DNA from: Octopus sinensis
Taxonomy: Eukaryota
Reading direction: 5' to 3'
Assembly: GCF_006345805.1 (NCBI RefSeq)
Contig: NW_021834168.1
Span: 1-51,949 of the forward strand
DNA length: 51,949 bases
Shown: positions 636 to 51,449 of the stretch, one piece after another
How positions within the stretch are numbered: the stretch's first letter is position 1
Layout: every line of letters starts with the position of its first letter
Made by a program: the position numbers and the translations under genes
The notes under the pieces: model-generated
The model's database searches: none
The model's input: only the letters and a program-made list of their open reading frames with translations
What the model was told of the DNA's origin: nothing

Positions 636-1033
636 TTACTCTTTTATACGTTTAAGTCATTTTACTGCGGTCATGCTGGAGCTACCCCTTAAAGAGCTTT
701 AATCAAAGAAATCGACCCTTTGTAAGCCTAGTAACTTATTCTATCTGTTTGTTTGGCAGAACCGCTATGTTACAGGTACATAAACACACCAATATTTATT
801 GTTAAGCGATGGTGACGGGGGGACAAACACAGATACAAAGGCACACAGACATATATGTATATATGCATACGTATATGAAGGGATTCTTTCAGTTTCCGTC
901 TACCAAATCCACTCACGAGGCTATGGTCTGACCGAGGCTTTGTAGAAGACTCTTCCCCAAGGTGCCACGCAATGGGACTGAACCGGGAGCCATGCGATTG
1001 GGAAGCAAGCTTTGTACCACACAGTTGCCTACG
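636..1033 (-). mobile_element. tRNA-derived SINE, family A (octopus-type), with internal (TA)/(CA) tract
   Basis: Reverse complement matches other family A copies in the window: head ...ctgtgtggtacaaagcttgcttcccaatcgcatggctcccggttcagtccc..., body gaccatagcctcgtgagtggatttggtagacggaaactgaaagaatccc, 3' ataagttactaggcttacaaa. Confidence 0.85.
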
Positions 1034-10190: not shown

Positions 10191-10608
10191 TACTCTTTTA
10201 CTTGTTTCAGTCATTTGACTGTGGCCATGCTGGAGCACCGCCTTTAGTCGAGCAAATCGACCCCAGGACTTATACTTTGGAAGCCTAGTACTTATTCTAT
10301 CGGTCTCTTTTGCCGAACCGCTAAGTTACGGTGACGTAAACACACCGGCATCGGTTGTCAAGCGATGTTGGGGGGGGGGGACAAACACAGATACACAAAC
10401 ATATACACACACATACACACTCATATATATATATATATATAAATATAAACATATATACGACGGGCTTCCTTCAGTTTCAGTCCACCAAATCCACTCACAA
10501 GACTCTGGTTGGCCAGAAGCTATAGTAGAAGACACTTACCCAAGGTACCACATAATGCGAATGGACCCGGAGCCATGTGGTTGGTAAGCAAGCTACTTAC
10601 CACACAGC
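10191..10608 (-). mobile_element. SINE family A, near full length
   Basis: High similarity to the other A copies across head, internal microsatellite and tail. Confidence 0.9.
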
Positions 10609-16364: not shown

Positions 16365-16397
<33 letters not shown>

Positions 16398-16463
16398 TGT
16401 ATGTATGTATGTATGTATGTATGAATGCATGCATGCATGTATGTATGTATGTATGTATGTATG

Positions 16464-16512
<49 letters not shown>

Positions 16513-16515
16513 ACG
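16360..16515. repeat. (TATG)n-(TATC)n compound tetranucleotide repeat
   Basis: Directly visible. Confidence 0.95.
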
Positions 16516-16761
16516 TATATATATACATGCATACATTTATTTATGCATATATACATACACATGTAAATATTCGAAAAACTCAATTATGCATATACAGTAG
16601 CGTTACTTAAATTATAGTTAATAGTACATTTATGATTAAACATTAATTATTTTCGTTCATTTAGTTACAATTCAAGCAATATGCAAATGGAAGAAACATT
16701 TTCTTTTATTCTTTTAAATGATATAAAGTTAAATATGAAAATTTTAATCAGTCTTATATAA

Positions 16762-20038: not shown

Positions 20039-21592
20039 TCAGGATTTGGGCACCAAGGCCCATTCGAGCAGAGAGTTATTGTTTGCGGAGACATATCCGG
20101 GTGTGGGTGGTTTGTCCGGTGCTGTTTGAAGGAATTTGTCCAAAGACTTCTTGAATTTTGTGTGGTCAGTTTCTTTTTTGGCGTGTCCTGGTGTAATGTT
20201 GAAGAGAGCGGGTCCAATTGAGGTGAAATAGTTGTGCCGTATTGTCGTTATGTGATGCGATTTAGATTTTTGTTGTGGACGGATGGCACGTGGTCCAAGC
20301 CTTGGATGCATTTTGAAGGTGATGCCAACATCATTCGGACAGTGCTGATGGAATATTTTCCACATCATGCAGATAATGTAGCGTTCACGGCGTCGTTGGA
20401 GTGAATACAATTTCAGCTTCTCTAGTCTACCCCAGTAGTCAAGGTCTGACATGCCATCTATCTTTTTTGTGATTGACCTTTGGGGGGCTTCAATTCTCAT
20501 AATATTTTGTTTTGTGTAGGGAGACCACAGTGGACAGCAGTATTCAAGGTGGGGTCGGGCAAAAGTGGAGAAGAGAAGGATAATAGCGTGGGAATCTCTC
20601 GACTGGAAGGTTCTGAGAATCCAGGAACACATTCTGCGGGCCATGTCAACTTTGCTGCTTATATGTGTAGCCCAGCTTATGTTGTTGTCCACTGTTACTC
20701 CCAGGTCTCTGATGTTGTTGGATGCCATGAGAATTTCTCCAGAAGGAAGATAGTATGGGAGTTTCAGAGCGTCCTCCCTTCCAAAGTAGATCAGTTCGAA
20801 TTTGTCTTCATTTAGCAACATGTTATTCTTTTCCGCCCATTGGACAACAGCCAGTAGGTCTGACTGAAGGTTTATTCGGTCATCCACGCCATTGATGACC
20901 TTCTGGAGCTTGGAATCATCAGCGAAGGTTCTGATGTTGCTGTGTTTGATGGTGTCAGTAATATCATTTATGTAGATGATGAAGAGAAGTGGGCCCAACA
21001 CAGTGCCTTGTGGGACACCACTGCTGACTTTGGCTGGGCTGGATTTGACTCCTTCGACTACAACATGTTGGGTTCTGTTAGAGAGGAAGCACTTGATCCA
21101 TTGCAGCAGCTTTCCAGTGACACCAATATTGGACAGCTTTCTCAGAAGGATCTTATGATCAACCCTGTCAAAGGCCTTGCTGAAATCAAGGTAGATGACA
21201 TCAGTGTTGGAACCCTCTCCCAAGGCTCTCAAAATGTCATCAAAATGATGCAGTAGCTGCGTCAGGCAATCTCTCCCATTACGGAATCCATGCTGGTTGG
21301 GGTTCAGCATATTATGACTCTCAAGGAAGTGAGTCATACGCGATCTCAGCACCCTCTCAAATACCTTGATGATATGAGAGGTGAGTGAGATTGGACGGTA
21401 ATTCACGACAAGCGATTTGTTTCCTTTTTTGAAAACTGGGACAACAGACTGGGATAGAAGGTCTTCTGGTATATATCCAGCATCCAGTGAGTTCCGCCAC
21501 AGATTGGCTAGAGGGGGTGCAAGTTGGTTTTGACACATCTTCAAGACACAAGCAGGGAACCTATCGGGACCTACTGCTGAATTATGCTTCAT
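20039..21592 (-). CDS. LINE ORF2, reverse transcriptase and C-terminal part (517 aa; frame open upstream to about 21661)
   Basis: NSAVGPD, NYRPISLTS, QHGFR, YLDFSKAFDRVDH, GVPQGTVLGPLLFIIYIND, FADD, RDLGV, RPHLEYC, LYSLQRRRERY. No internal stop. Confidence 0.95.
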   Translation of the reverse strand: MKHNSAVGPDRFPACVLKMCQNQLAPPLANLWRNSLDAGYIPEDLLSQSVVPVFKKGNKSLVVNYRPISLTSHIIKVFERVLRSRMTHFLESHNMLNPNQHGFRNGRDCLTQLLHHFDDILRALGEGSNTDVIYLDFSKAFDRVDHKILLRKLSNIGVTGKLLQWIKCFLSNRTQHVVVEGVKSSPAKVSSGVPQGTVLGPLLFIIYINDITDTIKHSNIRTFADDSKLQKVINGVDDRINLQSDLLAVVQWAEKNNMLLNEDKFELIYFGREDALKLPYYLPSGEILMASNNIRDLGVTVDNNISWATHISSKVDMARRMCSWILRTFQSRDSHAIILLFSTFARPHLEYCCPLWSPYTKQNIMRIEAPQRSITKKIDGMSDLDYWGRLEKLKLYSLQRRRERYIICMMWKIFHQHCPNDVGITFKMHPRLGPRAIRPQQKSKSHHITTIRHNYFTSIGPALFNITPGHAKKETDHTKFKKSLDKFLQTAPDKPPTPGYVSANNNSLLEWALVPKS

Positions 21593-21606
21593 TTCCTTTA
21601 TTACTG

Positions 21607-23055
21607 CTAAGACATCAGGAGCGCCAATGTTATGTCCGATAAAGTGTATTGGGGAGTAACATCACTGATACAGCCCAGATCAGTCATATCAGGATTGCTG
21701 AAAACAGAGCAATATTGTTTCTGCAATATTTCTCCCATGGTTTTGGCATTGTCTTGAAGAGTACCATTTTCATCAATCAGAGGGCCAACAGTAGAACCAG
21801 TGACTCTGTGTTTTTTTGCAAATGAAAAGAACACTTTGGGATTGAGTTTGATCTTCTCAATGGCCCAGGCCTCTTCAGCTCTTCGCTGACTATTGATGAT
21901 AGACATCATGTTGTTTTGGAGTTTATGATTTTTAATCTCTAGCGACGAGATGGCAGTCAGGTTGGTGTGTTGCTGTTGACAGTATTTCAGCATGTTGATC
22001 TTTTTGTTGATTCTTTTAATTTTCCTTATGAGAGATTTTCTATTTCTAGGGATTCGACACTTAGATTTGTTTGCAGATCTTAATGGGGTGTATCTTGCAC
22101 ATATGTTCGTGATGGTGTCTACAAGTGACTGCCAGGACTTTTTGATGTTAGTGGGTGTGTATGTGTGCGTGAAGGACCAATCGACTTGTGCAAGATCATT
22201 ATTGATCGCTTCCCAGTTTGCATTGTGGAAATCCATAGTGTCAAATGGATGAATAGGAGGGATGACATTTGTTTTGCATTTTGGCCAGTGAAATCTCAGA
22301 TCACAGAGAACCATGTCATGGTCGGAGAGTAGGGTTTTCTCCACTGCAATATTGTGGATAGTATCAGTGTGATTGCTGAAAATTAAGTCTAAGACGTTTT
22401 TGTGACATCTCGTTGGTTCGAGTACCAGTTGGGACAAGAAGAAGTCATCCATGAAGTCAAGAAGCGATTCCACTGCCTCCCTGTCAGGGGTTGAGAGAGA
22501 AGAACCTGGCGGCAGACTGTTTGTAGACCAGTCAACCCCGGGAAGGTTGATGTCTCCCATCATTAAAATGTTGTCTGGTTGACACTGCTGAATGAAACAC
22601 TTTATGCTGTTGAGGCATTCCTTGAAGCATGGTAGGGGCGTTTGGGGTGGTCTGTAGAGCCCAACTACTGTTAAGTTGTTGGTTTGACTGAACACAGCGA
22701 CTGCTTCGCAGTATCCATTCGAAAATATGTTCATGGCTTCTGTTGAGAATGAATCATGGACATAAATGGCAGTCCCACCCTTTCTTCTGCCAACACGATC
22801 AGCACGAATGGTTTTGAAATTTTTAACTTTCACCTCGGCTTCCAAGTGGAGGTCACTAAGATGGGTTTCAGTGAGGACGAAGAAAGGGATGTGGTTTGGA
22901 TGGGCCTCGACCCAGTCCTCCAGGAATCTTATCTTCCATTTTTGTGTATTGGTGGAAGGGCTGATGCCTTGGGCATTAAGCAGAAATGTTGAGGCGAGAG
23001 TGGATGGTTTTAATTGTTTTGGTGATTTGTTTATTTGATTGCTTTTTAATGGCAT
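21607..23055 (-). CDS. LINE ORF2, apurinic-like endonuclease part (likely start Met at 23055; joined to the RT frame by one frameshift)
   Basis: [36 protein letters not shown]...LDLIF and SDH are all present. The annotated start at 23181 lies in the flanking (TA)n and is spurious. Confidence 0.9.
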
Positions 23056-26474: not shown

Positions 26475-26741
26475 TACACACACATATCTGCAGTTGCATA
26501 TAACATAAGATTGTATTTTGTATAATACAAATAAAAAAGGGGAAATTCTTTTAATAAAATGTAACAATATAAACTTTTACAGTTAACTTATTTCTATATT
26601 TCGAATATTTTCTTATAATTCGACTAACTGTTGATTTAAAGAACTGTTATTCTTCTAAACTGCTTTATCGAACAATTGAACGATGTTGCGTACATTCCGT
26701 AAAAGTACTTTGGATAAATTACTACCAAACCGACGTGTCTT

Positions 26742-26788
<47 letters not shown>

Positions 26789-26807
26789 CATACATACATA
26801 CATACTT

Positions 26808-34684: not shown

Positions 34685-35048
34685 ATGGCTGTGTGGCAAG
34701 AAACTTGCTTCTCAACCACATGGTTCCAGGTTCAGTCCCATTGCGTGGCACCTTGGGCAAGTGTCTTCTACTATAACCTCGAGCCAACCAAAGCCTTATG
34801 AATGGATTTGGCAAATGGAAAGAAGCCCGTCGTGTATATATATATGTATATATATTTATGTCCGTGTGTGTCTGTGTTTGTGCTCCCACTATCGCTTGAC
34901 AACCGACGTGGGTGTGTTGATGTCCCCGTAACTTAACCGTTGAACGGACGAGACCCAAGAATAAGTACTTGGCTTACAAAGTTCTGGGATCGATTTGTTC
35001 GACTAAAGGCGGTGCTCCAGTATAGCTGCAGTCAAATGACTGAAACGT
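34685..35048 (+). mobile_element. SINE family A, near full length
   Basis: tggctgtgtggcaagaaacttgc...ggttcagtcccattgcgtggcaccttgggcaagtgtc...gcagtcaaatgactgaaac. Confidence 0.9.
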
Positions 35049-35098: not shown

Positions 35099-35446
35099 CA
35101 CACACGCACACTCACACACAAACACACACACACACACACACACACACATATGTATGTATTTGTGCCTGTGTATGTTGTATGTGTGTATTCTACGCTGATT
35201 GTTGGTTATTTTACGGCTTCATAACCTAACAATAACTGACCTGAAAATATAAGAACTGGTTACTATTTGTTCGATTACACCAGTCTTGTTGGTACCAGCG
35301 CATGACTACAGTTGGATGACCAAAAACAAGTGAAAGATAAAAGATACAGTCGAACAAAATGCTATTATTAATAATTAGTAGGAGAAAAACCATCGCTCGT
35401 GTTGTCGGTGTTTTGCTAGCTTATACAATCAGTGTATGTATGTATG

Positions 35447-35545
35447 TCATTGTTCAGTTTATTTCAAGATTTCTCTCCAATAGAGAAAGAGCCGGTTTCT
35501 AATCTTGGTTCAAGGAATCACATCAACAACAGGGCATATTTGTTT
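35447..35545 (-). mobile_element. 3' end of an RLE-type LINE, abutting (CATA)n
   Basis: Reverse complement ...ctctttctctattggagagaaatcttgaaataaactgaacaatga|catacatacatac; homologous to 39012-39057. Confidence 0.6.
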
Positions 35546-35590
35546 GTATGTATGCATGCATGCATGCATATATGTATGTATGTATGTATG

Positions 35591-35672
35591 TAAGTCTCCA
35601 CAAACAACAGTATTTGTAACCCGTATATGGTACCATATACGGGTTACAAATACTGTTGTTTGCGGAGACTTA
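35591..35672. repeat. 82-bp spacerless palindrome with 1 mismatch
   Basis: taagtctccacaaacaacagtatttgtaacccgtatatggt|accatatacgggttacaaatactgttgtttgcggagactta. Confidence 0.98.
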
Positions 35673-35874
35673 TTTTTGTAGTAATAGTAATAGCAACTCA
35701 TTCGACTGCTATTTCTAATATTTTCGGTATGTAGTTTAAGCAACTTGTTGCAAATAATCCTTTTATTATAATTATATAATTTTTACCGAATATGGTCCTT
35801 TCCATATCGAAAGACTACTAGGTGAAATTTATTGATTTTATTGAATTAATTATATTTCACCCTTTATATGTATG

Positions 35875-35908
<34 letters not shown>

Positions 35909-35925
35909 TGTATGTATGTATGTAT

Positions 35926-37119
35926 GTTTTCTTTTACTTTTTTTCAGGCATTCGACTGCGGCCTTGCTGGAGCACCGCCTAAAGAGTTTTAGCCGAAGAA
36001 TTCGATTCCAGGACTTATTCTATCGTTGTCTTTTGCCGAACCGTTAATGTATATGTGCAGATTTGTATGTTTTGTTTTGTCTGTATTCTCAAGCATATAG
36101 TTGCATATCTAGACATGCTCATATATGTTTAAATGATAAACAGTTCTTAAAGATTTTTACAGTTCCAGTGATGGGTTGGATCTGTAGTCTTCGAATTAGC
36201 TTTCTCCTTTCTGGTTTTGAGAAGCCCAATTTCTCAAGATTGTTACTTAGGCAGTGTGTTACATATCCCATAGCTCTAATAATCACAGGTATAAACCTGA
36301 ACATTTAATCTGGATAGAGTAACTGCAGATTTCTCAATAGTTCAGCGTAGGTGTCCTCGTTTTCACTCATCTTCAGCTTTACGTTGACATCTGCTGGGTA
36401 GCTAATTTCCACAACTGTGCACAGTTTCTCTTCTCTATCCCAATTGTTGCGCTTACATTTTATTGAGGTCTTCATTGGGTATCTATGTGTGTATGTATGT
36501 ATGGTATGTATGTATGTAGTATGTATGTATGTATGTATGTATGTATGTATGTATGTTTTCTTTTACTTTTTTTCAGGCATTCGACTGCGGCCTTGCTGGA
36601 GCACCGCCTAAAGAGTTTTAGCCGAAGAATTCGATTCCAGGACTTATTCTATCGTTGTCTTTTGCCGAACCGTAATGTATATGTGCAGATTGTATGTTTT
36701 GTTTTGTCTGTATTCTCAAGCATATAGTTGCATATCTAGACATGCTCATATATGTTAAATGATAAACAGTTCTTAAAGATTTTTACAGTTCCAGTGATGG
36801 GTGGATCTGTAGTCTTCGAATTAGCTTTCTCCTTCTGGTTTTGAGAAGCCCAATTTCTCAAGATTGTTACTTAGGCAGTGTGTTACATATCCCATAGCTC
36901 TAATAATCACAGGTATAAACCTGAACATTTAATCTGGATAGAGTAACTGCAGATTTCTCAATAGTTCAGCGTAGGTGTCCTCGTTTTCACTCATCTTCAG
37001 CTTTACGTTGACATCTGCTGGGTAGCTAATTTCCACAACTGTGCACAGTTTCTCTTCTCTATCCCAATTGTTGCGCTTACATTTTATTGAGGTCTTCATT
37101 GGGTATCTATGTGTGTATG
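35926..37119. repeat. Tandem duplication with 629-bp period, bounded by (TATG)n
   Basis: Copy 1 starts at 35926, copy 2 at 36555. The unique parts differ by five single-T deletions in copy 2. Confidence 0.95.
36050..36478 (-). mobile_element. RLE-type (R4/Dong-like) non-LTR retrotransposon fragment: endonuclease C-terminus and start of the 3' UTR (duplicated at about 36677-37100)
   Basis: Minus frame: TSIKCKRNNWDREEKLCTVVEISYPADVNVKLKMSENEDTYAELLRNLQLLYPD*MFRFIPVIIRAMGYVTHCLSNNLEKLG..., matching (NRPDI)VxD...V.I..P.D.N...K..Y..L...PVIIGALG. The RPDI segment appears deleted. Confidence 0.75.
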
Positions 37120-37520
37120 TATGTATGTATGTATGATGTATGTATGTATGTATGTGTTCATGCGTGTATGTGTGAAGGTTTCTTTGGGATTTATTTATGA
37201 TTTCTCCTTCGCAGAATTCGCATATAAAGTGATAAGGCTCTTTTGTTTAAGCCTTGTCAAATCTTGGCGTTTGTAGTTATTTGAATTGCTTGATGTATGT
37301 CCGTCTGCGCGTTGTGCATATGCATGTGGATGCAGATAAACATGCACTGCTATAGTGGGTGTCCGTGTCACGTTAGGAAACCATGCGCGGGGTTTATTGC
37401 TGTTTGTGTGTGCGTGTGTGCATGTGCATTCGATATTCATTTGTGACTGTGTACGTATATTTAACCGGAATTCCTCAAATGATGAACTCTTGAAATATAC
37501 GCATGTACGTGCGTACATTG

Positions 37521-37791
37521 TGGAGGCACATGGTCTAGTGGTTAGAGCAGCGGACTCGCGGTCGCGGAATCGCGGGTTCGAATCTCAGACCGGGCGATGT
37601 GTGTGTTTATGAGCGAAACACCTAAGCTCCACGCGGCTGACTCTTTCGCCACAACTTTCTCTCACTCTTTTCTCCTGCATCTTGCAGCTCACCTGCGACG
37701 GACCGGCGTCCCGTCCAGGTGGGGAACCTATACGTCAAGGAAACCGGGAAACCGGCCCCAATGAGACAGGCGTGGCTCGAGAAGGAACAAA
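37521..37791 (+). mobile_element. tRNA-derived SINE, family C
   Basis: A box tggtctagtgg (37531-37541), B box ggttcgaatc (37575-37584), GC-rich body cctgcgacggaccggcgtcccgtccagg...gaaaccggg. Confidence 0.85.
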
Positions 37792-38745: not shown

Positions 38746-38925
38746 GCCCCCCAACATCGCTTGACAACCGATGCTGGTGTGCTTACGTCCCCGTAACTTA
38801 GCGGTTCGGCAAAAGGGACACCGATAGAATAAGTACTAGGCTTACAAAGAATAAGTTCTGGGTCGATTTGCTCGACTAAGGGCGGTGCTCCAGCATGGCC
38901 ACAGTCAAATGACTGAAACAAATAA
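38746..38925 (+). mobile_element. SINE family A, 3' half
   Basis: ccccaacatcgcttgacaaccgatgctgg...cagtcaaatgactgaaacaa. Confidence 0.9.
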
Positions 38926-38934
38926 TAGAATCAA

Positions 38935-39057
38935 AGAATATATGTGCATGTCTAGATATGTAACTATACACATGAGAATACATACATAAAACATACAAAT
39001 CTGCACATACAGTTCTTTCTCAATTGGCAAGAAATCTTGAAATAAACTGAATAATGA
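38935..39057 (+). mobile_element. 3' UTR fragment of the same RLE-type LINE, ending at (CATA)n
   Basis: Overlaps both 36050-36130 (reverse complement) and 35447-35490 (reverse complement). Ends ...aaataaactgaataatga|catacatacata. Confidence 0.65.
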
Positions 39058-39557
39058 CATACATACATATACATATGAACGCACACACACACACGCCGAC
39101 CTACTCATACATACACATAAACACATATTTTGTCTAATGCAAACTCAGAAAAAATAATAAAAAAACTACTAAATAACCTAAAATAAAATAGCATAAAAAG
39201 AGAAAAAAAAGCTCAAATAAATAGAAATTAAGAAATTAAAAACAAAATTTATATTAAAAAAATTTAGAAAAAAAGAGAAATTGTCTCCTGGGAAGTCAAC
39301 ATATCAATCAATTTAAAAAGCTTAGTTTCAACCTTCATCTGTTTGCCGAATCTTTCTCTGATCTATTGCTGATCATTCCATTCTACCATTATCGAATTGA
39401 TCGCCCTAAGTGCGTTTCTTGTGTTTCTCACCGTTTCTTTCCTCATTCAATCTACCACTGCTGGATTTCATTTCTGAATCTGCTTAATTTTCTATCTATC
39501 TTACAGTCTTTGGTTTTTTTTCAGTTTAATTTGTGTCTTTCTGTTATATTTTTTTCT

Positions 39558-39970
39558 ATGTATGAACAAGTATATGTATGCATGTATGTATGTATGTATG
39601 TATGTATGTATGTATGTATGTATGCATGCATGTATGTATGTATGTATGTATGTATGTATGTATGTATGTATGTATGTTTGTATGTATGTTTGTATGTATG
39701 TATGTATATATGAATGTATGTATGTATGCATTTTTGAATAAATATATGTATGTATGTATTATGTAAGTATATATATATACGAATGTATGTATGTATGTAT
39801 CTATTTGTCTGTCTGTCTGATTGCCTGTCTGTATGTCATTCCGTCTGTCTATCCGTTTGTTTGCCCGTCTGTATGTCTGCCTGTCTGCCTGTTTGCCTGT
39901 CTGCCTGTCTGCCTGTCTGCCTGTCTTTCTCCCCTTTCTGCCTCTCTCTCTCTCTCTCACAGCATACCAC

Positions 39971-44009: not shown

Positions 44010-44220
44010 GTATGTGTGTGTATATGTTTCACCTCACCCCAACATCGCTTGACAACTTGATGCTGGTGTGCGTACGTCCCCGTAACTTAGCGGTTCGGCG
44101 AATGGGACCGATAGAATAAGTACTGGGCTTACAAAGAATAAGTCCTGGGGTCGATTTGCTCGACTAAAAGGCGGTGCTCCAGTATGGCCGCAGTCAAATG
44201 ACTGAAACAAGTAAAAGAGT
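43764..44220 (+). mobile_element. SINE family A with head deletion and expanded internal (TA)n
   Basis: ggcgcaggagtggctgtgtggttccactgtgtggcaccttggg...aagaagcccgtc(TA)n...gactgaaacaagtaaaagag. Confidence 0.9.
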
Positions 44221-48597: not shown

Positions 48598-48623
48598 GTG
48601 TATATACTCTTACTATTTTAGCC

Positions 48624-48824
48624 TTTTACTTGTGTCAGTCATTTGACTGCGGCCATACTGGAGTACTGCCTTTAGTTGAGCAAATCGACCCCAGGACTTA
48701 TTCTTTGGAACCCCAGTACTTATTCTATTGTTCTCTTTTGCCGAACCGCTAAGTTAAGAGGACGTAAACACACCAGCATCGGTTGTCAATCGATGTTGGG
48801 GGGGGACAAACACTGACACAAAAA

Positions 48825-49226: not shown

Positions 49227-49586
49227 CTGTGTGGTAAGTAGCTTGCTTACCAACCACATGGTTCCAGGTTCAGTCCCACTGCGTGGTACCTTGGTCGAGT
49301 GTCTTCTACTATAGCCTTTTAAGTGGATTTGGTAGTGTATGTGTTTATATGTTTGTGTGTATATGTTTGTGCGTCTGTGTTTGTTCCCCCACCATCGCTT
49401 GACAACCGATGCTGGTGTGTTTACATCCCCGTCACTTAGCGGTTCGGCAAAAAGACACCGATAGAATAAGTACTAGGCTTACGAAAAAATTAAGTCCTGG
49501 GGTCGATTTATTCGACTTAAAGGCGGTGCTCCAGCATGGCCGCAATCAAATGACTGAAACAAACAAAAGAATAAAAGAATAAAAGC
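49227..49586 (+). mobile_element. SINE family A with (AAAAGAAT)n tail, head-to-head with the previous copy
   Basis: ctgtgtggtaagtagcttgcttaccaaccacatggttccaggttcagtccc...gactgaaacaaacaaaagaataaaagaataaaag. Confidence 0.9.
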
Positions 49587-51261: not shown

Positions 51262-51363
51262 TATGTATGTATGTATGTATGTATGTATGTATGTATGTAT
51301 GTATGTATTATGTATGTATGCATGTATTATGTATGTATTATGTATGTATTTATGTATATATGC

Positions 51364-51449
<86 letters not shown>

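What the first reader, a model, noticed from the sequence alone, without database searches (positions are those of the whole stretch)
35434..36555. Candidate (CATA)n-targeting RLE retrotransposon (R4/Dong-like)
Seen: minus-strand RLE coding sequence (36478-36125) and its 3' UTR (to 36050), then a ~500-bp interruption, then the 3' end (35545-35447). A separate copy at 38935-39057 overlaps both pieces, showing they are collinear. Both independent 3' ends stop at the same base (...aaactgaa[c/t]aatga) and run into catacatacata. The 5' truncation at about 36478 also lies next to a long (CATA)n. Established: RLE elements are often sequence-specific, and Dong targets (TAA)n. I am not aware of a described (CATA)n-specific family. 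Inference: this family targets or seeds the very abundant (TATG)n tracts. Caveat: the 3' tracts are only about 3 units long and could be an element-encoded tail.
Basis: partly seen in the sequence, partly recalled or inferred. Interest (0 to 1): 0.75.

Follow-up and report, generated by a model that had tools for sequence, protein, structure and literature searches.

The report
Dong-like retrotransposon tied to (CATA)n repeats
This is a dead, broken copy of a Dong-type jumping gene in an octopus genome, and its relatives in other marine animals sit inside (CATA)n simple repeats on both sides, so the lineage most likely inserts specifically into that repeat, a new target for a known kind of element.

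Summary
On the minus strand there is a 5'-truncated C-terminal coding fragment of a restriction-like-endonuclease (RLE) non-LTR retrotransposon, with its 3' UTR in two pieces. A second short copy at 38935-39057 bridges the pieces. Both 3' ends stop at ...aaactgaaYaatga and run into (CATA)3.

Three corrections:
- The coding fragment occurs twice, because a ~625-bp unit (37155-36557 and 36556-35928) is tandemly duplicated. The true 5' junction is 37102/37103, also against (CATA)13.
- The "interruption" is composite: a 123-bp SINE fragment, (CATA)15, and 271 bp of unknown DNA with a palindrome. It lies in the UTR's own CATA-rich stretch.
- The second copy lacks part of the UTR.

Full-length relatives group with Dong (99% bootstrap) inside the R4 clade. 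Five related families from other assemblies end in (CATA)n in the same orientation. Four of them also have (CATA)n at the 5' junction, including a 5'-truncated copy and copies with unique DNA upstream. Sister families carry (CTTA)n at both ends instead.

Best reading: microsatellite-specific integration, as Dong does in (TAA)n, with a different target. The family does not explain most (CATA)n tracts in the window. Octopus evidence alone is thin (five copies). Verdict: new variant of a known kind.

The parts
37103..37155 (-). 5' flanking (CATA)13 tract at the original 5' junction; unique DNA lies upstream
36755..37102 (-). RLE C-terminal coding fragment, upstream copy of the tandem duplication
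   Evidence: 99.4% identical to 36478-36129; tblastn to P0013/P0074
36679..36754 (-). Proximal 3' UTR, upstream duplicate
36557..36678 (-). 5'-truncated SINE-like fragment, upstream duplicate
36479..36556 (-). (CATA)n tract at the junction of the two ~625-bp tandem units
36119..36478 (-). It is 5'-truncated, the PD motif is deleted, there is an in-frame stop at 36307-36305, and the true stop is 36121-36119
36051..36118 (-). Proximal 3' UTR, ending in the CATA-rich internal stretch
35928..36050 (-). Nested 5'-truncated fragment of an abundant SINE-like repeat (about 10 copies in the window)
35867..35927 (-). (CATA)15 tract, probably the expanded internal UTR microsatellite
35596..35866 (-). 271-bp insert of unknown origin; contains a near-perfect palindrome at 35594-35669
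35546..35595 (-). (CATA)/(CATG) tract that precedes the distal UTR
35447..35545 (-). Distal 3' UTR up to the 3' end of the element (...aaactgaacaatga)
35488..35519 (-). Conserved 3' UTR hairpin (CCTTG-stem-loop-CCGG), degenerate in this copy, about 45 nt before the 3' junction
35433..35446 (-). (CATA)3 at the 3' junction
38935..39057 (+). Second, independent copy: 123 nt of 3' UTR with an internal deletion that removes the hairpin; same 3' end
39058..39069 (+). (CATA)3 at the 3' junction of the second copy
38798..38930 (+). SINE-like copy whose 3' end directly abuts the second element copy, so this 5' junction is not (CATA)n

Best explanation
The locus holds two dead remnants of a Dong-type (R4-clade) RLE non-LTR retrotransposon family of octopods.

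The lineage to which this family belongs integrates into (CATA)n microsatellites in a fixed orientation, in the way that Dong integrates into (TAA)n.

Inferred mechanism, by analogy with R2:
- The ORF protein binds the element RNA through its 3' UTR. A conserved hairpin about 40 nt from the 3' end is the likely handle.
- The RLE nicks the (TATG)n strand of the repeat, and the freed 3'-OH primes reverse transcription at the RNA 3' end (target-primed reverse transcription).
- The RNA 3' end itself carries CAUA units that can pair with the nicked strand.
- Incomplete copying gives 5'-truncated inserts, and each insert splits one tract into a 5' and a 3' tract.

Later history of this locus:
- The UTR's own CATA-rich stretch expanded and took up a SINE fragment and a 271-bp piece.
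- Unequal exchange between the 5' flanking tract and the internal tract duplicated a ~625-bp unit.

Shown: homology, clade placement and flank structure. Inferred: cleavage specificity and the order of events.
For: RLE identity:
- C-terminal profile against solved R2 proteins.
- RVT_1 plus CCHC plus (R/K)PD..E..K in the long relatives.

Clade:
-, using reference sequences from the PMC5678591 supplement.

Octopus copies:
- The 3' end is followed by (CATA)2-3 in 3 of 5 copies.
- The 5' junction abuts (CATA)n in 2 of 3 informative copies.

Relatives with (CATA)n:
- TARA family: (CATA)8 at the 5' end after unique DNA, and (CATA)>=12 at the 3' end.
- L025: a 5'-truncated copy between (CATA)~58 and (CATA)~33. 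These are the only sense tracts in 17 kb.
- L026: an intact 1085-aa ORF whose 3' UTR ends in (CATA)n.
- L028 and L029: (CATA)19-28 at both ends.

Sister families:
- L030-L034 have (CTTA)n at both ends, and L031 has unique DNA upstream.

Shared 3' hairpin:
- Covariation supports it: 85.7% of cells paired against 66% in shuffles and 19-43% when the partners are slid.
- It lies at a fixed ~40 nt from the microsatellite.
Against: - Only five octopus copies could be examined. Their 3' tracts are short (0-3 units).
- L001 is followed by ctgacatatat, and L022 has no CATA.
- The second window copy has a SINE tail, not (CATA)n, at its 5' junction.
- The window copy itself has no RT, so its clade placement rests on C-terminal similarity (42-57% identity) to relatives that do.
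- Several related contigs end inside the repeat, so tract lengths and outer flanks are unknown.
- The hosts of the relatives are unknown.
- No empty site was seen.
- No biochemical evidence exists.
Confidence: 0.7

Rival explanations
1. (CATA)n is only an element-encoded 3' tail, like the short microsatellite tails of CR1 or L2 elements. Integration is not sequence-specific, and the (CATA)n seen at 5' junctions is coincidence in a repeat-rich genome.
For: - Octopus 3' tracts are only 2-3 units long.
- One 5' junction is a SINE tail.
- (CATA)n is common in the window, with 31 tracts.
Against: - 5'-truncated copies in three genomes abut sense-oriented (CATA)n.
- In L025 the two flanking tracts are the only sense tracts in 17 kb.
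- Full-length copies have (CATA)n between unique DNA and the element's 5' end.
- Sister families show the same two-sided pattern with (CTTA)n.
Confidence: 0.15
2. The two-sided repeats come from head-to-tail arrays. On this view the 5' (CATA)n is simply the tail of an upstream copy, produced by recombination or rolling amplification rather than by targeting.
For: - The window itself shows a tandem duplication mediated by (CATA)n.
- Several related contigs start and end inside the repeat.
Against: The sequence upstream of the 5' tract is unique DNA that does not resemble the element's 3' end. This holds in the window, L015/L017, L025 and L031.
Confidence: 0.05
3. The family is a major source of the genome's (CATA)n tracts: the tracts are born from the element's tail and internal UTR stretch rather than being pre-existing targets.
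For: - Intact UTRs carry an internal CATA-rich stretch.
- That stretch is expanded to 15 units in the window copy.
Against: - Only 2 of 31 tracts follow a recognisable 3' end of the element.
- Most tracts lie in compound microsatellites such as (GATA)n(CATA)n, (CA)n or (TA)n, with no trace of the element.
- The hairpin model finds only one site in the window.
Confidence: 0.1

Closest known systems
Dong (Bombyx mori; also DongAg, DongBg), R4 clade
   Same: - RLE-type non-LTR retrotransposon.
- RT of the relatives groups with Dong at 99% bootstrap.
- CCHC plus RLE at the C-terminus.
- Embedded in a microsatellite on both sides in a fixed orientation.
   Different: - Dong's target is (TAA)n (PMC3812793). 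Here it is the tetranucleotide (CATA)n, and (CTTA)n in sister families.
- RT identity to Dong is only about 33-38%.
R4 (Ascaris lumbricoides), 28S rDNA-specific
   Same: Same clade: 100% bootstrap for R4 + Dong + these elements.
   Different: R4 targets a site in 28S rDNA, not a microsatellite, and is more distant (28-32% RT identity).
Waldo (WaldoAg1/2, WaldoFs1), R1 clade
   Same: It targets (ACAY)n microsatellites, which include the (ACAT)n = (CATA)n motif (PMC3812793).
   Different: Waldo encodes an APE-type endonuclease and belongs to a different clade. The shared target would be convergent.
Togen (fish, NeSL-related) and some HERO families
   Same: They are RLE elements reported as microsatellite-specific: (TG)n for Togen and unspecified repeats for some HERO families (PMC4640811).
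   Different: They belong to different clades. HERO and NeSL separate cleanly from these elements in the RT tree.
R2 (Bombyx, birds; solved structures 8gh6, 9dou, 9nl2/3)
   Same: Same domain plan of RT, CCHC and RLE. Sequence similarity across RT (E=1e-24) and RLE (E=1e-7). R2 is the TPRT paradigm used here for the mechanism.
   Different: R2 targets 28S rDNA and lies in a separate clade. No Pfam zinc-finger or Myb hit was found in the N-terminal parts of the relatives.

Membership tests
RLE-type non-LTR retrotransposon (R2/R4/NeSL/HERO/CRE group) | PD-(D/E)xK restriction-like endonuclease domain at the C-terminus | tested here: met
   A profile that includes the window peptide aligns with the RLE of solved R2 proteins, E~1e-7, with KPD/VDV/EK..KY matched. 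The window copy itself has lost the PD residues.
RLE-type non-LTR retrotransposon (R2/R4/NeSL/HERO/CRE group) | Reverse transcriptase domain upstream, with a CCHC knuckle between RT and RLE | tested here: met
   Met in relatives P0074, P0105, P0068 and P0013: RVT_1 at E=1e-20 to 1e-29, and CxxC..H..C. Absent from the window copies because they are 5'-truncated.
R4 clade, Dong subgroup | RT phylogeny places the element with Dong/R4 | tested here: met
   NJ tree with 300 bootstraps: relatives + Dong 99%, + R4 100%. The TARA and Argonauta elements fall in a 100% subclade with P0074 and P0068. For the octopus copy this is indirect, through the C-terminal domain only.
R4 clade, Dong subgroup | Insertion inside a microsatellite, with the repeat on both sides in one orientation | tested here: met
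   Seen in the TARA family, L025, L028, L029 and the window main copy, and in the (CTTA)n sisters L030, L031 and L034. Octopus L001 and the second window copy fit only partly.
Dong sensu stricto | Target is (TAA)n | tested here: not met
   The flanks are (CATA)n or (CTTA)n, never (TAA)n.
Waldo (R1 clade) | APE-type endonuclease at the N-terminus | tested here: not met
   The relatives have a C-terminal RLE and no APE domain in Pfam.
HERO clade | RT phylogeny places the element with HERO | tested here: not met
   HERO forms its own 100% clade apart from these elements.
Sequence-specific integration (functional claim) | Protein cleaves the (CATA)n duplex, and orthologous empty sites hold an intact tract | not testable with these tools
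   No whole octopus assembly could be searched, and there is no biochemistry.

The most novel reading that the evidence does not exclude
In this Dong subclade the choice of microsatellite is set mainly by base-pairing between the repeat units at the RNA 3' end and the nicked target strand, downstream of a conserved protein-binding hairpin, rather than by protein-DNA recognition. A family could then switch from (CATA)n to (CTTA)n by changing its tail. That would be a naturally RNA-programmable RLE retrotransposon.
Probability: 0.2. Interest if true: 0.8.

Novelty: new variant of a known kind. Interest (0 to 1): 0.5.

Why it matters
RLE retrotransposons are the model for site-specific target-primed reverse transcription, and they are now being adapted for gene insertion. 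How they read their targets is therefore an active question.

This clade offers closely related families that share a 3' hairpin and a 5' motif but sit in different tetranucleotide repeats, (CATA)n or (CTTA)n, next to Dong's (TAA)n. That is a compact natural experiment on how target specificity changes.

For cephalopod genomics it gives a specific behaviour to the Dong-R4 elements, which have been reported as abundant and recently active in Octopus vulgaris (PMC13282606). It also shows how such inserts destabilise microsatellites locally, through nested insertions and a 625-bp tandem duplication.

The finding is not a new kind of element.

Tried and rejected
- Pfam on the 119-aa window peptide gave only a sub-threshold SAM_TNK hit. 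Homology needed profile searches.
- The first word-indexed search found only two octopus proteins.
- P0002 has no contig on record. L022 and L023 are short contigs.
- The first tree script timed out, and the second gave a meaningless tree because of saturated Kimura distances and a mis-cut P0037. It was redone with Poisson distances.
- Rfam found no ribozyme or other family at the element ends, only sub-threshold miRNA matches to the repeats.
- An exact-pattern scan for the octopus 3' end found nothing in genome contigs or viral contigs, as expected for prokaryotic and viral collections.
A4 worked.
- Literature searches for a (CATA)n or (ACAT)n RLE family found none. Repbase Reports and Novick et al. 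2009 on Anolis R4 could not be read, so prior description in Repbase cannot be excluded.
- ARAGORN finds no tRNA gene in the window, so the tRNA origin of the SINE-like repeat is not shown here.
- I considered whether the SINE-like repeat shares the (CATA)n preference. Its other nine copies have varied 3' flanks, so it does not.

Full report
**Setting.** The window is AT-rich eukaryotic DNA that is full of microsatellites. The closest protein matches to the feature come from Octopus vulgaris and O. bimaculoides, so the window is from an octopus or a close relative. All element coordinates below are on the minus strand unless stated otherwise.

**Checking the observation.**
- Frame 36478-36119 encodes a 119-residue peptide with one internal stop at 36307-36305. 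It ends at a stop codon at 36121-36119.
- The peptide alone hits nothing significant in Pfam. It does match two octopus proteins, at E=6e-24 and 6e-20.
- One of these, P0002, extends the homology upstream through ...CKHDRPDIMI....
- A profile of the three sequences finds 598 proteins in the 1.84-billion representative set. The long hits (P0074 1085 aa, P0105 1139 aa, P0068, P0013) have an RVT_1 domain, then a CxxC..H..C knuckle, then (R/K)PD...(E/D)(I/V)...K.
- A profile of this C-terminal region, window peptide included, aligns end to end with the CCHC + RLE domain of solved R2 proteins (9nl3, 9dou; E about 1e-7). KPD, VDV and EK..KY are in register.
- The peptide is therefore a C-terminal RLE-domain fragment. 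The window copy has lost the five residues that include PD and is dead.
- The short copy at 38935-39057 (+) matches 36126-36052 (87%) and 35490-35447 (91%).
- Both 3' ends stop at ...aaactgaa[c/t]aatga and are followed by (CATA)3.
- Perfect (CATA)n tracts of at least three units cover 2.1% of the window, in 31 tracts. Two independent ends each starting such a tract in the sense orientation is not a chance result.

**Anatomy corrected.**
- A self-comparison shows that 37185-36496 matches 36563-35867 at 97%. The coding fragment, proximal UTR and following repeat piece are each 98.6-99.4% identical between the two units.
- A ~625-bp unit is therefore tandemly duplicated. The layout is (CATA)13, unit, (CATA)19, unit, (CATA)15.
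The original 5' junction is 37102/37103. It also lies against (CATA)13, and unique sequence lies upstream of that tract.
- The duplication is best explained by unequal exchange between the 5' flanking tract and a tract inside the UTR.
- The "~500-bp interruption" has four parts:
  - a 123-bp 5'-truncated fragment of an abundant SINE-like repeat, which has about ten copies in the window;
  - (CATA)15;
  - 271 bp with no other copy in the window, containing a near-perfect palindrome with 39-bp arms (z=-18);
  - a (CATA)/(CATG) tract.
- Other octopus copies show that the intact 3' UTR has a CATA-rich stretch at exactly this position: L001 from O. vulgaris, and Logan contigs L002 and L004. The interruption therefore lies in the element's own internal microsatellite.
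- The second window copy lacks about 55 nt of UTR and sits directly after the 3' end of a SINE copy.

**Clade.**
- I took reference RT-to-CCHC sequences (R2, R8, R9, R4, Dong, HERO, NeSL, Utopia, CRE) from the alignment file supplied with PMC5678591.
- By BLASTP the full-length relatives score 221-336 bits against Dong, 141-273 against R4, and 85-168 against the best R2/R9, NeSL or Utopia sequence (HERO and CRE do not reach the listed top hits).
- An NJ tree recovers the known clades. It places P0074, P0068 and P0105 with Dong at 99% bootstrap, and with Dong + R4 at 100%.
- RT sequences translated from the TARA element and from an Argonauta hians copy fall in a 100% subclade with P0074 and P0068.
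- This agrees with published repeat annotation. Dong-R4 is an abundant LINE class in coleoids and the most numerous recently active RLE class in O. vulgaris, with 5 families and 1129 recent insertions (PMC8967140, PMC13282606).
- The octopus copy has no RT of its own, so its placement is indirect.

**Target or tail: the octopus copies.**

| Copy | 5' junction | 3' flank after the element end |
|---|---|---|
| Window main copy | (CATA)13 | (CATA)3 |
| Window second copy | SINE tail | (CATA)3 |
| L001, O. vulgaris (5'-truncated) | (CCAT)n(CATA)3 | ctgacatatat |
| L002 | not determined | catacatacgtaca |
| L022, a more distant cephalopod-like copy | not determined | no CATA |

This is suggestive but thin.

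**Target or tail: the relatives.**
- TARA Pacific family (P0009). The 4.2-kb contigs start in (CATA)n and end ...gaataagtattaa|(CATA)>=12. Two longer contigs show unique DNA, then (CATA)8, then the element's 5' end.
- L025, a 5.4-Mb contig of unknown host. A 5'-truncated copy lies between (CATA)~58 and (CATA)~33. These are the only sense-oriented tracts in 17 kb.
- L026. It carries an intact 1085-aa ORF, and its 3' UTR runs into (CATA)n at the contig end.
- JGI contigs L028 and L029. These are full-length elements with (CATA)19-28 at both ends.
- In no case does the DNA upstream of the 5' tract resemble the element's 3' end, so these are not head-to-tail arrays.

**Sister families with another repeat.**
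- A covariance model of a short hairpin (next section) located the 3' ends of related elements that have long UTRs (L030, L032, L033). About 40 nt after the hairpin they run into (CTTA)n, not (CATA)n.
- L030 is a full-length element with (CTTA)24 at the 5' end and (CTTA)12 at the 3' end.
- L031 has unique DNA, then (ACTT)18, then the element. L034 starts with (TACT)14.
- The same two-sided pattern with a different tetranucleotide argues that the repeat is a family-specific integration site and not an accident of one genome.
- In a C-terminal-domain tree the (CATA)n families are paraphyletic and the (CTTA)n group is nested, but support is weak at 51%.

**Shared RNA features.**
- The last ~100 nt of seven elements share a hairpin, CCTTG-stem-loop-CCGG.
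- Seven of its nine pairs show changes on both sides. 85.7% of cells are paired, against 66% in column shuffles and 19-43% when the partners are slid.
- The hairpin lies 37-47 nt before the microsatellite in every family.
- In the window it is at 35519-35488 and is degenerate. The second copy lacks it.
- The full-length elements also share GGACGTG about 20 nt after the 5' repeat.
- No Rfam family, ribozymes included, matches either end.

**Mechanism.**
- By analogy with R2 (established biochemistry, not tested here), the protein would bind the 3' UTR, probably at the hairpin.
- It would then nick the (TATG)n strand and prime reverse transcription from the nick.
- CAUA units at the RNA end can pair with the nicked strand.
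- I cannot tell whether specificity comes from the protein, from this pairing, or from both.
- Truncation, nested insertion and unequal exchange then account for the present state of the locus.

**What is not supported.** The idea that this family seeds the genome's many (TATG)n tracts does not hold in the window. Only two of 31 tracts follow a recognisable 3' end of the element. A few more derive from its internal stretch and the duplication. Most tracts are parts of compound microsatellites with no trace of the element.

**Comparison and novelty.**
- Microsatellite-specific non-LTR elements are known. They include Dong in (TAA)n, Kibi in (TC)n, Koshi in (TTC)n, Waldo in (ACAY)n and Togen in (TG)n. 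Some HERO families are also reported to be microsatellite-specific (PMC3812793, PMC4640811).
- Waldo already covers an (ACAT)-type repeat, but it is an APE-type R1-clade element.
- I found no description of a (CATA)n- or (CTTA)n-specific RLE or Dong-type family in the searchable papers. Repbase Reports could not be searched.
- I rate this a new variant of a known kind.

**Confidence.**
- That the feature is a Dong-type RLE element remnant: about 0.95.
- That the lineage integrates specifically into (CATA)n: about 0.7-0.75.
- That the octopus family itself does so: about 0.6.

Noticed in passing
window 35928-37155: A ~625-bp unit is tandemly duplicated at 97-99% identity, with (CATA)n at all three boundaries. 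The unit consists of the RLE fragment, the proximal UTR and a SINE fragment. This looks like recent unequal exchange between microsatellite tracts. TRF missed it because the period exceeds 500.
   Followed up: yes
window 35594-35669 (within the insert 35596-35866): A near-perfect palindrome with 39-bp arms (-42 kcal/mol as DNA, z=-18) lies inside a 271-bp insert that has no other copy in the window. Its origin is unknown; a MITE end or a foldback is possible.
   Followed up: partly
window 651-767, 2154-2286, 10194-10324, 34945-35045, 38798-38930, 44100-44218, 48623-48752, 49436-49571: About ten copies of an abundant SINE-like repeat that ends ...ggcggtgctccagcatggccgcagtcaaatgactgaaacaagtaaaagag. 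Longer copies carry a B-box-like GGTTCAGTCCC and an internal (TA)/(TG) microsatellite. ARAGORN calls no tRNA. The 3' flanks are varied and are not (CATA)n.
   Followed up: partly
L030, L031, L032, L033, L034 (ERZ1740060/ERZ1740067 contigs): Sister Dong-like families with the same 3' hairpin are flanked by (CTTA)n instead of (CATA)n, at both ends. This is an apparent switch of tetranucleotide target within the clade.
   Followed up: partly
L018 ~66-72, L028 ~135-141, L029 ~128-134, L030 ~118-124, L034 ~81-87: A conserved GGACGTG motif (GGATGTG in L034) lies about 20 nt downstream of the 5' microsatellite in full-length elements of different families. It could be a 5' processing or promoter element. 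No Rfam ribozyme matches it.
   Followed up: partly
window 20441-21607 (minus strand): A reverse-transcriptase-like fragment of another LINE (21-33% identity to the Dong-like RTs) that is unrelated to the finding.
   Followed up: no
window 37530-37790: A GC-rich block containing a tRNA-like stretch (ggtctagtggttagagcagcggactc...gggttcgaatc on the plus strand) that ARAGORN does not call. It is probably the head of another SINE family.
   Followed up: no
L022 226-262: A related cephalopod-like copy carries a (TATG)n tract, in antisense orientation, inserted inside its RLE coding region.
   Followed up: no
window 16368-16575, 26700-26805, 51262-51400, 39809-39952: Compound microsatellites such as (GATA)n(CATA)n and (CAGA/CAGG)n blocks. 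Most (CATA)n tracts in the window belong to arrays of this kind and not to element ends.
   Followed up: partly
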